This document shows positions 39,023-43,722 of a stretch of 64,000 bases of DNA, one piece after another (the stretch's first letter is position 1; the number at the start of each line of letters is the position of its first letter). The DNA is from Zygnema circumcarinatum SAG 698-1b (lineage: Eukaryota > Plantae > Zygnematophyceae): positions 5,557,909 through 5,621,908 of the forward strand of contig CM074804.1 in the NCBI GenBank assembly GCA_037447605.1, in the 5' to 3' direction. Both the position numbers and the translations under genes were made by a program. The notes under the pieces were generated by a model. The model was not told where the DNA came from. It made no database searches and saw only the letters and a program-made list of their open reading frames with translations.

Positions 39023-42000
39023 TCATTGGGAGTACAGCAGGAAGTGCTGCCTCATAGAGTTGAACCACACCACATCATCATGCCACATGGCCATCAGTTC
39101 GTCTGCACTCGCCCCCTCCTCAACAGCTTCTCTGAAGGCCTTGCTCCCTGTGAGCATATCCACCCAATACGTGCCCTTATCGCATCGCCAGCTGAAGGAG
39201 TCCCCGTACATCTTCCGAATATTGACTAGCAACGTCGCCGCCACCTGAAGTGGATTGAAGAGCCGGCGGTCGATCACGTGGACCTGCAGCTCACCCCCCA
39301 TCATGGGCTTTTAGGGTTTACCTGGAGCAAAAATGCATGGTCATGTATGGATGCGCCTAAATGCAACTTCAGCACCAAGCGACAACCAGTCCCGAGCTGC
39401 GAATAGTTGACGACATGGACAAAAACTTCAGCAGAGCTCTACTTTCCTCAGGTTATTTTAAAGAAGAAAGCAAAAAAAAAAAAGAACGAAAGCACTGAAA
39501 GCACTGAACAGGAACCAGCCGCTCAGTAACAAGGGGACCTTTACGAAAGAGGGTTAGTTGCCCTTTCTCCCACCTGTACTCCGCGAACAGGTTTGCCTGC
39601 GTACTTGCTGAAAGTCGGAGTGAAGGCGACTTCCCGAAAGAGGGCTCCGGGACATGAAGCCGCCCTGACGGCCTGAGCCAAGCGGTAGTCCAGCCATGGC
39701 GCCCCTATCTGCACAGGGGCCGTGATTGTTGGAAAAAAGGCATCATGGCCCAAGGGCTTATTACGGCGGTACCTGTCTTTATCCTGCCACTTATGCAAAA
39801 GCATTTGCTTGAAAGTTTAACTGAGCCGGCTTACGTTCACCCAAACCTTGAATTTCTCTCTGGGTTGGCTCTCAATTGTGATGCAAACTAAACCACCTTT
39901 GATGAAGCCACAATACTTCAGGACACGGTACTGGCAAATCGCATCATACAGCTATCCATTAAGCAGAATACTATACCCACTTCTCATGTAGACGTCTAGA
40001 GTAGAAAGTTTGAACGTTCAAACTACTGCAACTCAGCCCATCTTCCTTCCCAAAGGGCCCAAGATTCTTACCAATTCGAAAGGCTGGGTTGTACCCCGGC
40101 CTTCAGAGACGTTTGTGCCCTGCAAAGCCCACATCTGCCTATAAATGACACTTGAAGGTTCAACGAGGCCTGCTATTTTCCCTTGATGAAGGCCTATTCG
40201 CAGAAGCCAAATGATGTCATGAAGGTAACGAGTTAGAAGTGTCAAACTGTTGGCTGACAAATGATGATCATGTTATGCACTCTACAACTACTACACAAGC
40301 TGCCGCTTTTGGAATTCAAAAGGGCAGAGTAGCTTGCCACACAACACACCGTTTTCCCACAGTGAGAGTGATATGGAGGGCTTTAGCCACCTCAAAGAGG
40401 CACATGCCGGGGTAGAGGAGAGCGGTAGTGGGTGTGGGCATGTTTGGAGAAGGCGCCACCCATGGCCTCTTCAAGTCCTCATGGAGCATGCCACGTGTCC
40501 ATCCCTTAAGGGGAATCACCTCCAAGGACACCTGCGGACAGGGCAGGGCAAGGAAACCCAATGCCTTGAATATGACAATTTTTTACCTCAAAGTGCCAAA
40601 TCTGAACTCTTCCAACCATAGCATAGTGAGGGAAATATTCGACAACTAATTAAATGTCCCAGCATTGGGGTGCAAACTGAGGAGGTGACCTCAGCAAAAG
40701 CAGATGTCGAGGTGTCTTCCAGGACAGGTGTCACTCAGGAAGACAGATGTTTGAGAAAAATCACTTTAGGGACCAATCAGGAGGGCCCACCTGGCGGCAT
40801 CACCTGCCTGCCTGCCTCTGCAGCGACATACTCCGAGTTGAATAGAAGCGCCAATTCCGCAACTGTCATCCCATGGCGGAGAGCGATTGACTGCAGGACA
40901 AAGGAGCACTCACTCAGCCAAGGTAAATAGACACCTCATGGAAGCCTATGGGAAAGAAAAAAACGATTAATTTCGTAAGAGGAGTAGCAGATTCATTGTG
41001 CATTACTTTCAAATACTTATACGTAGCAGAAAAGGTGAAAGGCCAAGTGAGTGAAACATCGCAGCAACAAAATGAAGAGCAGGTGGCAGCCCTCGTTCTG
41101 CACCTTTCGGCCCACAAATGAGCTGAATTCTGCGTTAAGAAGGGGCCCATCCACCGCTATGCCGCCAATGGGATTCGGACGGTCCGGAACAACAAGACGG
41201 ATGGGTCGGGGGGCCATCGCTGCCGCCACCATGCAGTCGTAGAGGGTCCAAATGTATGTGTAGAAGCGCACCTTCACCGAGGGCAATGGAGAGAAACAGT
41301 CGGAGGAAGTAAAAGGCATTGACTGTACAGATAATCCCAGAATCTACAACCTGTACCGAAAATAAGCATTCAAACTAACAAAAACATAAAGAAATAGGGG
41401 CACGACCACTGGCTGGTCAGTGGCAGCGTTACTACTCGCAATCCAAAGAAACGGGGTTAATGAAATTTTGGGTGGGGGGGAGGAGGGAGGGAGGGAGGGG
41501 GGGAGAGGAAGGAGGAGGGGGAGGGGGCATACCCCAACATCCTGCATGTCAAAGAGAAGTAAATCCACTTGAGCCTTCTCAAAAACCGCCGTTAGAGTGC
41601 GTCCTCTCTGCAGATATGGCAAGGAGATGGACTTTCTAAGTATCCGAACTTGATGACTTTTAGGCTTGCCACCATTTGTTGAGTTATAACACTGCCACGG
41701 GCAAGAGCCGAAACTACTGTGGCAGATCTGATAGAGTTACACCTAAAGCAATCATTCTTTATTGGATTGGTTGATCATTAAGTAGGAATATCTCAGAAAT
41801 TTCGAAACAGTCAGGAGCTTGCACGCTGGTTGTTCGCCTTTATTGGGGTCCCCAATTCAATGTATCCTTGAATGTCTAGTGGCTTCTTAGATTTTATCGC
41901 CCCCACCTTTTGGTAGATATCATAAACAGGTACTTGAGTTTGCTGGTCAGTTTGAGTTCCTTCCGAAGACCCCGCCTGCATTTCACATTTCCCCCTCCCC

Positions 42001-43722
42001 CTCACACATAAAAACAACTAAACTTCCCATCCTCTCACACATGTGGACTAGTCATAGTAAAGTTGAAACTTGGTTTTCTTGCTCTTTGACAGGCAACTCT
42101 GACATCACCATGTCCCCTTTAGAACGCCCCAGCTTCGTTAAACATTTAACGTTTCACTTTGTATTTCACGGGAACAGTACTTAGGATGCCAATATTCCCA
42201 TTACAGCATACCTGGGCTGCCCCACGAAAGCCATGCTCTGGGCCAAAGATTGCCACCAGCTGCACATTGTTCGCCATATGAAGAGTGTCCACCTGGCAAC
42301 ACATGAGCTAGCCATGTAAGGGAAACAAAATCATTCAGCGAGGTGACCTTCAGTCAAGGTATATTCGCAAATGACCGAGGGCTCTCAGCAGAAGGAAATA
42401 TTTCGAAGGAGCCTTGCAGCTAGGCTAGCCCGATGGAGTCCTAGAAAAAGTACATGAGTTATCTTCAACCCTCTCTTCTGATGTTCAGGGACGCACTTGC
42501 CACGCTCAGATGGGAAAGCTATTTACGAAGAGAAAAAAATATAGAAAATATTCGACTAAAAATCCGAACCTCCTCAATATGTGCAACCACGCGAACTCCA
42601 AATGAAGCTAACGATGAGCCTAAAAAAAAGGACTCCAGCTGAGTTTGGAGCAAGGAGAGACATGGAAAACTTTCAAAACTTGAAACGTATAACTCGAGCA
42701 TATAAAAATAGGCCACAAACCAGGTGCGCCAAATCTGGAAAAACGCTTGTTGCATTAGCAATAATTCCAACCTGCAAATTCCACCGCTCTAAACTGGGCA
42801 GTCAGTCGTCAGCGGTCAGTTGTCAGTTGGTTCCTGGTGTGAATGTCTACATCACTCCAAGTGAGAAGACGTTCTTGAAATATGCCATCGCATCCTATCA
42901 AGATCTGACAAAGCCCTCATGAAATTATGAGCCAGAATATCGAAAACAAAAACACTGGGTGTATTCCTATTGTCGTTTAGCCCTTTTGCTGTAAAGAAAA
43001 ATTGTCAAAGCCGGTTAGTTTCGTTCCATAAGGACCGCTTGGATTCATTTGCTCCTTTCCCGAGTAAGCGCGATTTGTATACCTTAAAGTCATCAGTTGC
43101 AATCAAGGATGAGGATATACTGCTACATGATTATGCATTCAGGCTTATAAGAAAGTCAGATGACCTTCGTGCGAGAGAAACAGCGCCCTTCCTAGTTTGT
43201 AACAAATTATCGAGCGAAATGCCTCCCAAGCATTTTTTATAATCTGCTATTCTTGCTCCAATCTTCGCTAAAAAAAGGCTTATCTGTTCAATAACATGCA
43301 TTTTATTATTGAATATTACATTGCAAACCAACATTTTGGTATGAAAATGTAGTGCGAATGAATAGAGCGAGATTAGAAAATGCAGCCGCATGAGAATAGA
43401 AACATACCCTGCAGTTTTGAAGCTGAAAGAAGTCGTTCTCTGCAAGTACCTCGATTCCAGTCTTGAAAGCTTCAGTCCTCACCGCATTGGCAATAGTTGA
43501 GATTGAGGAAGACTCTACCTCATCTACTGTCAGCTGACGCTTGCGCAGCCTGCGCAGCAGCAAGGGCAGAGATACGAGCATGGCGCTCAGGGAAACTGCA
43601 ACGGGCTGCATCCTCAACCAGACACAAACTCTAAAAACCCTGCAAGGCGTATTGCTGCAAGTAAAGGGTCTCCTCCAGCAACGACATGCGAGACGCGAGC
43701 GGTCTGCTTGAAACTCGCACAT
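39023..43722 (-). CDS. namZ: DUF1343/YbbC (NamZ-like exo-beta-N-acetylmuramidase) homologue, 11 exons
   Basis: Exons (minus) 43722-43408, 42771-42721, 42292-42212, 41975-41907, 41607-41533, 41271-41104, 40890-40804, 40531-40391, 40119-40072, 39708-39574, 39283-39023, all GT-AG, giving one 476-aa frame. Family motifs in order: [98 protein letters not shown]...FLLY. Start is 43722 or 43611. Confidence 0.92.

What the first reader, a model, noticed from the sequence alone, without database searches (positions are those of the whole stretch)
39023..43722. Spliced eukaryotic homologue of bacterial peptidoglycan-recycling muramidase NamZ (DUF1343): candidate plastid cell-wall turnover enzyme
Seen: a complete 11-exon ORF with all DUF1343 motifs, surrounded by plant nuclear genes, so it is not bacterial contamination. 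Established: DUF1343/YbbC of Bacillus subtilis is the exo-beta-N-acetylmuramidase NamZ, which removes terminal MurNAc from peptidoglycan fragments; mosses and streptophyte algae retain peptidoglycan-synthesis genes and beta-lactam-sensitive plastid division. Inference: this enzyme could be the degradative/recycling arm of plastid peptidoglycan, or a horizontally acquired enzyme for bacterial wall fragments (scavenging, or removing immune elicitors). The N-terminal extension (hydrophobic VAVSLSAMLVSLPLLL followed by RRLRKR) resembles a signal anchor of organellar outer-membrane proteins.
Basis: partly seen in the sequence, partly recalled or inferred. Interest (0 to 1): 0.85.

Follow-up and report, generated by a model that had tools for sequence, protein, structure and literature searches.

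The report
Green-alga gene for bacterial wall-sugar-trimming enzyme
A plant-lineage alga carries a real, expressed, intron-containing gene for a bacterial-type enzyme (NamZ) that clips the sugar MurNAc off bacterial-wall fragments; green plants gained it from bacteria long ago, and it may clear fragments of the thin bacterial-type wall that still surrounds their chloroplasts, though that role is untested.

Summary
An 11-exon, GT-AG gene with only phase-0 introns lies on the minus strand at 39023-43611. Transcript contigs from four runs carry all ten splice junctions. The exons map in order onto Pfam NamZ_N and NamZ_C.

The start codon is probably ATG 43611 (439 aa), not 43722.

The enzyme looks active. 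79 of the 80 columns conserved in bacterial relatives are kept, including the GPEHG glutamate and the EGRGT arginine.

Homologues occur across green algae, two bryophytes and a lycophyte, all annotated only as "hypothetical" or "DUF1343". All ten intron positions match those of a moss and a liverwort, and three match those of a chlorophyte, so the gene is ancient in green plants.

The nearest bacterial relatives are Actinomycetota and Thermaerobacter enzymes (50-56% identity), which sit in NagZ-NamZ-AmiE-MurR recycling clusters. No cyanobacterial relative was found. Whether the green clade is sister to these bacteria or nested within them is unresolved.

The bacterial twin-arginine export signal is replaced here by an N-terminal anchor: a moderately hydrophobic helix followed by RRLRKR. 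This fits the published rules for outer-membrane proteins of plastids and mitochondria and predicts a cytosol-facing enzyme.

A role in plastid wall turnover is plausible but unproven. The gene was not recovered from Physcomitrium, Marchantia polymorpha or Selaginella.

The scan has one unchecked note of a LysM-M23 peptidoglycan peptidase gene elsewhere in this genome.

The parts
43408..43611 (-).
   Evidence: GT donor after 43408; junction 43408|42771 seen in transcript contigs; homologues P0154 and P0272 start at the equivalent hydrophobic segment.
43555..43611 (-). Codons 1-19, MQPVAVSLSAMLVSLPLLL: an uncharged, moderately hydrophobic N-terminal membrane segment
   Evidence: Wimley-White mean 0.07 (interface scale) and 0.36 (octanol scale), both below the 0.4 limit cited.
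43537..43554 (-). Codons 20-25, RRLRKR: positively charged flank on the C-terminal side of the membrane segment
   Evidence: 5 basic residues among the next 6. P0154 has RRVARRK. Picocystis has RRKKRRRK a few residues after its membrane segment, following an acidic E.
43631..43726 (-). 5' leader with two out-of-frame upstream ORFs (ATG 43726, 31 codons; ATG 43687, 18 codons; shared stop at 43633-43631)
   Evidence: Read directly from the sequence. Transcript ends at 43623 and 43695, and one contig running through.
42721..42771 (-). Exon 2 (VGIIANATSVFPDLAHL)
42212..42292 (-). Exon 3, carrying FGPEHGFRG. The glutamate codon at 42236-42238 corresponds to the proposed catalytic Glu92 of B. subtilis NamZ.
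41907..41975 (-). Exon 4
41533..41607 (-). Exon 5
41104..41271 (-). Exon 6 (RFYTYIW...DRPNP core of NamZ_N)
   Evidence: E 4e-17; matches PDB entries 4k05 and 4jja.
40804..40890 (-). Exon 7
40391..40531 (-). Exon 8 (end of NamZ_N, PSPNMP motif)
40072..40119 (-). Exon 9 ([16 protein letters not shown]). The arginine codon at 40096-40098 corresponds to the conserved Arg279 of B. subtilis NamZ.
39574..39708 (-). Exon 10 (NamZ_C)
   Evidence: E 1e-10.
39023..39283 (-). Exon 11 (NamZ_C to its end, plus the stop codon at 39023-39025)
   Evidence: E 2e-16.

Best explanation
This is a functional nuclear gene of a streptophyte alga. It encodes a membrane-anchored exo-beta-N-acetylmuramidase of glycoside hydrolase family GH171 (NamZ).

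Shown here: the gene is spliced and expressed. The two-domain NamZ core keeps essentially every residue that is conserved in its bacterial relatives. The gene family was already in the common ancestor of chlorophytes and streptophytes and has been inherited vertically. Its nearest relatives are exported enzymes of Actinomycetota and Thermaerobacter that sit in peptidoglycan-recycling gene clusters.

Inferred: an ancient transfer from a bacterium of that kind brought the gene in. The twin-arginine export signal was lost. In this alga it was replaced by an N-terminal signal anchor (membrane helix plus RRLRKR) that should insert into the outer membrane of the plastid, or possibly the mitochondrion, leaving the enzyme on the cytosolic face.

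There it would hydrolyse the beta-1,4 bond after a non-reducing-end MurNAc in peptide-free peptidoglycan fragments such as MurNAc-GlcNAc. The only obvious source of such fragments inside a walled, non-phagotrophic green cell is the peptidoglycan layer of its own plastids. The most likely job is therefore clearance or recycling of plastid wall glycan fragments as they leave the organelle.

My confidence in the identity and origin part is about 0.9. My confidence in the plastid-fragment part is about 0.4. The single figure given for this explanation (0.5) is for the whole statement taken together.
For: Gene model and splicing. Family assignment.

Conservation: 79 of 80 columns that are at least 92% conserved in 52 bacterial relatives are identical in this protein, including E in GPEHG and R in EGRGT. 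The proposed catalytic Glu92 and Arg279 are from PMC8054146.

Green homologues: Chara, Klebsormidium, Chlorokybus, Mesotaenium, Closterium, Ceratodon, Marchantia paleacea, Diphasiastrum, Cymbomonas, Picocystis and Chloropicon.

Introns: all 10 positions and phases are shared with Ceratodon and M. paleacea, 8 with Klebsormidium and 3 with Cymbomonas.

Gene tree: green clade 99/91, streptophytes 96/88.

Nearest bacteria and their context. The neighbourhood is a GH3 NagZ-like gene, NamZ, a beta-lactamase-fold AmiE-like gene and an RpiR/SIS regulator, matching the B. subtilis recycling gene set that includes NagZ, AmiE and NamZ (PMC8054146).

Export signal: 188 of 207 close bacterial relatives carry a twin-arginine motif, and none of the green N-termini inspected shows one. 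Most green homologues have no signal at all, and three have a helix followed by a basic cluster.

Anchor rules.

Taxa with the gene are reported to keep the peptidoglycan synthesis genes. P. patens DipM sits at the chloroplast surface without any predicted targeting signal.
Against: No activity, localisation or phenotype data exist for any green homologue.

The Ceratodon query recovered only M. paleacea and Diphasiastrum among land plants. The gene is therefore apparently missing from Physcomitrium, M. polymorpha and Selaginella, where plastid peptidoglycan is functional, and so it cannot be an obligatory part of that system.

The predicted topology puts the enzyme outside the intermembrane space where the wall lies.

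Chloropicon, and probably Chlorokybus, have secretory-type N-termini.

The partner enzymes NamZ needs are not identified in plants: an amidase, and a glucosaminidase that exposes terminal MurNAc.

The co-occurrence with peptidoglycan genes could simply reflect two ancestral traits lost together in derived lineages. I could not test absence from core chlorophytes.
Confidence: 0.5

Rival explanations
1. The enzyme works on peptidoglycan from other organisms. It would digest wall fragments of bacteria that are eaten or that live around the cell, either for nutrition (amino-sugar scavenging) or to remove immune-active fragments. It would be a legacy of a phagotrophic green ancestor.
For: The bacterial relatives are exported scavenging and recycling enzymes. 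Ciliates acquired NamZ by transfer, and it is discussed there in the context of bacterivory and symbiont digestion. Cymbomonas, which has the gene, eats bacteria. The Chloropicon and Chlorokybus homologues have signal-peptide-like N-termini.
Against: The window's protein and two other algal homologues have basic residues after the membrane helix, not before it, which predicts a cytosolic catalytic domain. The land-plant, Klebsormidium, Chara and Cymbomonas homologues show no signal peptide. Walled, non-phagotrophic cells have no obvious route for foreign wall fragments to reach the cytosol.
Confidence: 0.25
2. The fold was kept but the job changed. After transfer, the enzyme was recruited to an endogenous substrate that is not peptidoglycan, such as another N-acetylhexosamine-containing glycan or glycoconjugate on the cytosolic face of an organelle.
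For: Substrate range varies within GH171: Tannerella NamZ1 releases disaccharides while NamZ2 releases MurNAc. The loss of the export signal places the enzyme in a new compartment. The gene persists in some lineages and is missing from others that have plastid peptidoglycan.
Against: 79 of 80 family-conserved columns are unchanged, including the arginine thought to face the active-site cleft. That argues against a change of specificity. No alternative substrate is known.
Confidence: 0.15
3. This rival concerns origin only. The gene came with the plastid from the cyanobacterial endosymbiont and not by a separate horizontal transfer, and cyanobacteria later lost it.
For: The gene is as old as the green lineage. 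The green clade may be sister to its bacterial relatives rather than nested within them, so the donor is not pinned down.
Against: There was no cyanobacterial sequence among the best 120 proteins in three searches, nor among the best 80 of 596 genome loci. Anabaena is reported to have no NamZ orthologue. The published distribution of the family does not list cyanobacteria. No glaucophyte or red-algal homologue was seen.
Confidence: 0.1
4. Bacterial contamination of the assembly, or a dead pseudogene.
For: The family is overwhelmingly bacterial.
Against: The gene has ten spliceosomal introns that are removed in transcripts from four runs. It has eukaryotic neighbours on both sides. Intron positions are shared with a moss, a liverwort and two other algae. 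The reading frame is intact and nearly all conserved residues are kept.
Confidence: 0.01

Closest known systems
B. subtilis NamZ (YbbC), founding member of CAZy family GH171 (PMC8054146)
   Same: Same two-domain architecture (NamZ_N plus NamZ_C). Same conserved GPEHG glutamate and EGRGT arginine. The nearest bacterial relatives of the alga's gene lie in the same kind of NagZ / AmiE-like / MurR-type cluster as the B. subtilis gene.
   Different: The alga's gene is eukaryotic, nuclear and has 11 exons. It has no cleavable export signal but an N-terminal membrane anchor followed by a basic cluster. There is no operon context. Its activity is untested.
Twin-arginine-exported NamZ proteins of Actinomycetota (Streptomyces, Nocardioides, Nonomuraea, Actinoallomurus) and Thermaerobacter
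   Same: These are the closest sequences outside green plants, at 50-56% identity over the whole catalytic region. They form one clade with the green sequences in the trees.
   Different: They are bacterial, intronless and carry a twin-arginine signal. Whether the green clade is their sister or nested within them is unresolved.
DUF1343 / hypothetical proteins of Chara braunii, Klebsormidium nitens, Chlorokybus, Ceratodon purpureus, Marchantia paleacea, Diphasiastrum complanatum, Cymbomonas, Picocystis and Chloropicon
   Same: Orthologues at 54-61% identity for most of those named, lower for Mesotaenium, Picocystis and Chloropicon. All ten intron positions are identical in the moss and the liverwort. 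Picocystis and the nearest transcriptome homologue (P0154) share the pattern of a helix followed by a basic cluster.
   Different: The land-plant and Klebsormidium proteins start MGQ/MGN and have no membrane segment. The Chara and Picocystis genes are intronless. Chloropicon has a secretory-type signal.
Horizontally acquired NamZ of ciliates (Paramecium bursaria, anaerobic APM ciliates; bioRxiv 10.1101/2024.09.14.613017 and PMC13198582)
   Same: Eukaryotic GH171 genes of bacterial origin.
   Different: They were not compared here by sequence. They are presumably independent transfers, and are discussed in the context of feeding and symbiont digestion rather than plastids.
Known plastid peptidoglycan hydrolases of mosses and glaucophytes: DipM (PMC4015805); MltB and VanY-type enzymes (Utsunomiya et al. 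2021, cited in PMC12681378; the enzyme names are from my own knowledge, as the paper was not readable here)
   Same: Nuclear genes of bacterial type that act on organelle peptidoglycan. Moss DipM also lacks a predicted targeting signal yet sits at the chloroplast surface.
   Different: Those enzymes cut peptides or act as lytic transglycosylases, and they have knockout phenotypes. NamZ would be an exo-glycosidase trimming glycan ends, has no functional data, and is absent from the moss in which the others were studied.

Membership tests
GH171 / NamZ (Pfam PF07075 + PF20732) | N-terminal catalytic domain NamZ_N followed by the C-terminal domain NamZ_C | tested here: met
   Exons match NamZ_N 18-203 and NamZ_C 27-152 in order. 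The Chara orthologue matches PDB 4k05 end to end with E 1e-64.
GH171 / NamZ (Pfam PF07075 + PF20732) | Conserved glutamate at the tip of strand 2 (Glu92 in B. subtilis) and the cleft-facing arginine (Arg279) | tested here: met
   E in FGPEHGFRG (codon 42236-42238) and R in SEGRGTT (codon 40096-40098). Both columns are at least 98% conserved in 52 bacterial relatives, and 79 of 80 conserved columns are kept. The mapping to B. subtilis numbering is by motif, because I did not have the B. subtilis sequence.
GH171 / NamZ (Pfam PF07075 + PF20732) | Exo-beta-N-acetylmuramidase activity on pNP-MurNAc and MurNAc-GlcNAc | not testable with these tools
   Needs recombinant enzyme and substrates.
GH171 / NamZ (Pfam PF07075 + PF20732) | Export from the cytoplasm (Sec or twin-arginine signal), as in the characterised bacterial enzymes | tested here: not met
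   188 of 207 close bacterial relatives have a twin-arginine motif. The alga's protein instead has an uncleaved-looking helix plus RRLRKR.
GH171 / NamZ (Pfam PF07075 + PF20732) | Genomic association with NagZ, a MurNAc-L-Ala amidase and MurQ/MurR | tested here: not met
   This holds for the nearest bacterial loci. In the window the neighbours are PIG-P and an RNB exoribonuclease. This is expected for a eukaryote, so it is not informative against membership.
Signal-anchored outer-membrane proteins of plastids/mitochondria (Lee et al. 2011 rules, as reviewed in PMC4010795) | A single N-terminal membrane segment with Wimley-White hydrophobicity below 0.4 | tested here: met
   Residues 1-19 give a mean of 0.07 (interface scale) or 0.36 (octanol scale). 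I could not confirm which of the two scales the original study used.
Signal-anchored outer-membrane proteins of plastids/mitochondria (Lee et al. 2011 rules, as reviewed in PMC4010795) | Three or more basic residues directly after the membrane segment | tested here: met
   RRLRKR has 5 basic residues in 6. P0154 has a basic cluster directly after its helix, and Picocystis has one a few residues further on.
Signal-anchored outer-membrane proteins of plastids/mitochondria (Lee et al. 2011 rules, as reviewed in PMC4010795) | Experimental localisation in the outer envelope with the bulk of the protein in the cytosol | not testable with these tools
   Needs GFP fusion and protease protection.
Plastid peptidoglycan machinery | Presence wherever plastid peptidoglycan is functional, and absence where it is lost | tested here: inconclusive
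   All named carriers belong to groups reported to keep the synthesis genes. But the gene was not recovered from Physcomitrium, M. polymorpha or Selaginella, and absence from core chlorophytes was not tested.
Plastid peptidoglycan machinery | Cyanobacterial (endosymbiotic) ancestry, as for the Mur genes | tested here: not met
   The nearest relatives are Actinomycetota and Thermaerobacter. No cyanobacterial relative was found.

The most novel reading that the evidence does not exclude
Green plants hold an anciently captured bacterial exo-muramidase on the cytosolic face of the plastid outer envelope. There it degrades peptidoglycan glycan fragments as they leak out of the organelle. It would be the first glycan-trimming, clearance or recycling enzyme of the plastid wall, and it would have been recruited from a non-cyanobacterial donor.
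Probability: 0.3. Interest if true: 0.8.

Novelty: new member of a known kind. Interest (0 to 1): 0.5.

Why it matters
How the peptidoglycan layer around the plastids of algae, bryophytes and ferns is remodelled and removed is largely unknown. Only a peptidase-type factor (DipM), a lytic transglycosylase and a carboxypeptidase have been tied to it.

An intact exo-muramidase conserved from prasinophytes to lycophytes, with its export signal stripped off, is a concrete candidate for the missing glycan-degrading step. It can be tested in transformable species that carry it, namely Ceratodon and Marchantia paleacea.

Whatever its role, this is a clean case of a very old bacterial gene transfer into the green lineage. 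It is dated by intron positions shared between chlorophytes and streptophytes. In the paper library searched here I found no mention of this family in plants or green algae.

Tried and rejected
- **Start codon.** I rejected ATG 43722 as the start because of its weak context, the strong out-of-frame ATG four bases upstream, the transcript ends and the homologues' N-termini.

- **Remote searches.** The spliced protein has no single reference, so it could not go to the remote search, fold or look-up tools. I searched with exon 11 and then with full-length homologues. All work on the full model was done in scripts.

- **NCBIfam.** A scan of single exons gave nothing useful.

- **Donor claim.** My first tree seemed to nest the green clade inside Actinomycetota. 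An AU test then showed that a tree with the 37 close bacterial sequences held together is at least as good, in fact 40.6 log-likelihood units better (p-AU 0.94). An LG+F+G4 tree gave the sister arrangement with weak support. I therefore dropped the claim of nesting and keep only that these are the nearest relatives. A longer IQ-TREE run timed out.

- **Cyanobacteria.** I could not obtain any cyanobacterial GH171 sequence for the tree. The negative rests on ranked searches and two papers.

- **Organism.** I could not identify the organism beyond a streptophyte alga that falls outside the land-plant clade in the gene tree.

- **Myristoylation.** N-myristoylation of the MGQ/MGN starts in land plants and Klebsormidium was considered. 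Only Diphasiastrum fits the usual Gly2...Ser6 pattern, so I do not claim it.

- **Literature.** Utsunomiya et al. 2021 (moss MurJ and peptidoglycan hydrolases) is not held in the library.

- **Structure prediction.** I did not run it. The fold is already fixed by sequence matches to two solved structures.

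
Full report
**What is there**

The minus strand between 39023 and 43722 holds eleven open segments joined by ten GT..AG introns. Every intron lies between codons (phase 0). Together they give one reading frame of 476 codons from ATG 43722, or 439 codons from ATG 43611.

Nine exons long enough to scan match Pfam NamZ_N (PF07075, profile positions 18-203) and then NamZ_C (PF20732, positions 27-152) in strict order. 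Single-exon E-values reach 4e-17 and 2e-16. Exon 6 alone finds the two solved DUF1343 structures from Bacteroides, 4k05 and 4jja.

**Expression and splicing**

Transcript contigs from four public runs of the same organism lie on the exons. They show nine of the ten junctions directly, all CT..AC on the plus strand, which is GT..AG on the gene's strand. One 2554-base contig joins exon 1 to exon 6 with exactly 276 bases between them, the summed length of exons 2-5, so it also contains the tenth junction.

**Eukaryotic context**

The window is eukaryotic. It holds a U6 snRNA gene at 37060-37160, a PEPCK exon, a PIG-P exon on the plus strand just upstream, and an RNB-domain exoribonuclease further upstream on the minus strand. 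Contamination and pseudogene status are excluded.

**Start codon**

ATG 43722 has T at -3. It sits four bases after a strong-context ATG (43726) in another frame, whose 31-codon ORF stops at 43631. A second upstream ATG (43687) opens an 18-codon ORF with the same stop.

Two transcript contigs end at 43623 and 43695. Contigs that continue beyond 43900 have higher depth and probably belong to the head-to-head PIG-P gene, because the contigs carry no strand information.

The nearest homologue (P0154) and the Picocystis UniRef entry (P0272) begin directly with the hydrophobic segment. I therefore take ATG 43611 as the start, giving MQPVAVSLSAMLVSLPLLLRRLRKRQ... and 439 residues.

**Is the enzyme intact?**

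I aligned the model with 52 bacterial relatives. Of the 80 columns that are at least 92% conserved, the model is identical in 79. The single exception (L to P at position 226) also varies among the other green sequences.

The kept residues include the glutamate of FGPEHGFRG and the arginine of SEGRGTT. These correspond by motif to Glu92 and Arg279, the proposed active-site residues of B. subtilis NamZ (PMC8054146). The sequence gives no sign of decay or of a change in specificity.

**Relatives in eukaryotes**

- A whole-library phmmer search with exon 11 and three word-indexed searches, with name look-ups, found homologues in many green lineages.
- Streptophyte algae: Chara braunii, Klebsormidium nitens, Chlorokybus, Mesotaenium, Closterium.
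- Land plants: the moss Ceratodon purpureus, the liverwort Marchantia paleacea and the lycophyte Diphasiastrum complanatum.
- Chlorophytes: Cymbomonas, Picocystis and Chloropicon.
- Others: an MMETSP transcript, and a EukProt transcriptome sequence (P0154) that is the closest at 61% identity.
- All are annotated only as hypothetical or DUF1343 proteins.
- Three unnamed marine-metagenome sequences fall in the same clade. One of them lies next to a protein of more than 2000 residues with five cyclic-nucleotide-binding domains, which suggests a picoeukaryote.

**Age of the gene**

I mapped the exon structure of four orthologues from their genomic loci. The results were:

- All ten introns of the window's gene lie at the same alignment column and phase in Ceratodon and M. 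paleacea. Exon sizes 17, 27, 23, 25, 56, 29, 47, 16 and 45 residues are identical.
- Eight introns are shared with Klebsormidium.
- Three are shared with the chlorophyte Cymbomonas (after model residues 105, 149 and 253).
- The Chara and Picocystis copies have no introns.

In the gene tree the streptophytes form a clade (96/88), and land plants form a clade inside it (100/99). The window's sequence pairs with P0154 (99/95) outside the land plants.

The gene was therefore present, with introns, before chlorophytes and streptophytes split, and it has since been inherited vertically with losses.

**Relatives in bacteria and the origin**

The best bacterial matches, at 50-56% identity over the whole catalytic region, are nearly all Actinomycetota: Streptomyces, Nocardioides, Nonomuraea, Actinoallomurus, Jatrophihabitantaceae and uncultured forms. 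Thermaerobacter and one Bacillota genome also appear.

No cyanobacterium appears among the best 120 proteins of three searches, or among the best 80 of 596 confirmed genome loci. Anabaena is reported to lack NamZ (PMC10936207), and the published survey of the family does not list cyanobacteria.

A site-heterogeneous tree placed the green clade (99/91) inside the actinobacterial sequences. This nesting did not survive testing:

- A tree with the 37 close bacterial sequences held together was 40.6 log-likelihood units better than the free tree, with p-AU 0.94.
- An LG+F+G4 tree recovered those bacteria as a clade (80%) beside the green sequences, with weak support around that point.

What is solid is that green and Actinomycetota/Thermaerobacter enzymes are each other's nearest relatives. 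The precise donor is not resolved. An endosymbiotic origin remains possible only if cyanobacteria lost the gene later.

**What the bacterial relatives do**

In Nocardioides, Thermaerobacter and Actinoallomurus the gene is followed by a beta-lactamase-fold protein with a MAM-like domain, of the AmiE type. In the Nocardioides locus it is also preceded by a GH3 (NagZ-like) gene and followed further on by an RpiR/SIS regulator. This matches the B. subtilis recycling gene set that includes NagZ, AmiE and NamZ.

In the Atlas search other bacteria fuse NamZ to beta-lactamase-fold or Amidase_2 domains. Of 207 close bacterial relatives with a complete N-terminus, 188 carry a twin-arginine motif. The source lineage is thus a bona fide exported peptidoglycan-recycling enzyme.

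**What changed in the green lineage**

None of the green N-termini inspected shows a twin-arginine signal. Their N-termini fall into three groups:

- The window's protein, P0154 and Picocystis begin with an uncharged helix followed, directly or within a few residues, by a dense basic cluster: RRLRKR, RRVARRK and RRKKRRRK.
- Ceratodon, M. paleacea, Diphasiastrum and Klebsormidium begin MGQ or MGN and reach the catalytic domain after about 18 residues. Chara and Cymbomonas also lack any hydrophobic start.
- Chloropicon, and probably Chlorokybus, have secretory-type signals.

For the window's protein, the helix has a mean Wimley-White hydrophobicity of 0.07 (interface scale) or 0.36 (octanol scale), and five of the next six residues are basic. 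Both values satisfy the two published criteria that separate signal-anchored outer-membrane proteins of chloroplasts and mitochondria from ER proteins: hydrophobicity below 0.4, and at least three basic residues in the C-terminal flank (PMC4010795, summarising Lee et al. 2011).

Such proteins keep their bulk in the cytosol. But it implies a cytosol-facing enzyme, and it cannot distinguish plastid from mitochondrion.

**Function**

That the product is an exo-beta-N-acetylmuramidase is a strong inference from conservation. What it works on is open.

In favour of plastid peptidoglycan:

- Every named carrier belongs to a group reported to keep the full synthesis toolkit. This covers Cymbomonas, Chloropicon, and all streptophyte algae and bryophytes.
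- No seed-plant homologue appeared, although algal homologues at 53-56% identity were listed.
- A cytosol-facing or signal-less muramidase in a walled phototroph has no obvious substrate other than fragments leaving the plastid.
- Moss DipM shows that enzymes at the plastid surface may lack predictable signals.
- An unchecked note of this scan reports a LysM-LysM-M23 peptidase gene elsewhere in this genome.

Against plastid peptidoglycan:

- The Ceratodon query recovered only M. paleacea and Diphasiastrum among land plants. It did not recover Physcomitrium, M. polymorpha or Selaginella, so the enzyme is dispensable where plastid peptidoglycan clearly functions.
- The enzyme would sit outside the intermembrane space.
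- NamZ needs peptide-free, MurNAc-ended substrates, and the enzymes that would make them are unknown in plants.
- Two ancestral traits can be lost together without being linked.

The main rival is action on foreign bacterial wall material. It fits the bacterial and ciliate precedents and the secretory-type N-termini of two algae, but it does not fit the topology predicted here.

**Comparison with what is known**

GH171 is biochemically defined only in bacteria. Transferred copies have been described in ciliates. Searches of the paper library for DUF1343, for NamZ with algal terms, and for YbbC with chloroplast found no mention of this family in plants or green algae. The orthologues nevertheless sit in public databases as uncharacterised proteins.

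I class it as a new, eukaryotic member of a known enzyme family with a changed targeting signal. It is also a reasonable but unproven candidate for a missing step in plastid wall turnover.

Noticed in passing
window 39023-43611 (-); L084, L086, L085, L087: All ten introns of this once-bacterial gene are in phase 0. Seven of the ten junctions read AG|, and seven of the ten are followed by G. The same ten positions are kept in a moss and a liverwort. This looks like intron gain at proto-splice sites followed by very long conservation.
   Followed up: partly
L089 (Chara braunii), L088 (Picocystis): The Chara orthologue is a single uninterrupted ORF, although Chara falls inside the intron-rich streptophyte clade. 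It may be a retrocopy or a case of complete intron loss. The Picocystis copy is also intronless and lies between a DEAD-box helicase gene and a ribosomal protein L23 gene.
   Followed up: no
window 43631-43990: The NamZ gene and a PIG-P gene on the plus strand (exon 45295-45543; a probable first exon near 43987-44130) are arranged head to head, with transcript ends only tens of bases apart. The NamZ leader carries two upstream ORFs that end 20 bases before the main ATG.
   Followed up: partly
P0393 versus P0272: A EukProt protein labelled Pavlova lutheri (a haptophyte) has the same unusual N-terminal stretch (LVEHRRKKRRRKWQVGPL) as the Picocystis protein. It is probably a mislabelled or contaminating green-algal sequence, not a haptophyte gene.
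   Followed up: no
P0151, P0153, P0270, P0152: The land-plant and Klebsormidium orthologues all start with Met-Gly (MGQ or MGN). Only the lycophyte fits the usual N-myristoylation pattern, so lipid anchoring in place of the algal membrane helix is possible but unsupported.
   Followed up: partly
window 46769-47800 (-) and about 51821-52288 (-): A DIS3/RNase II-type exoribonuclease gene (RNB motif at 47570-47800) lies upstream on the same strand. I did not build its gene model.
   Followed up: no
window 48329-48753 and 49648-50072 (+): Two identical copies of a roughly 390-base ORF pair lie about 1.3 kb apart. This is a local tandem duplication or repeat element, and I did not examine it.
   Followed up: no
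window 41467-41529: The intron between exons 5 and 6 holds a C/T-rich low-complexity run (ccctcc repeats). The read-laying tool skipped it as a repeat, which is why that one splice junction was not listed directly.
   Followed up: yes
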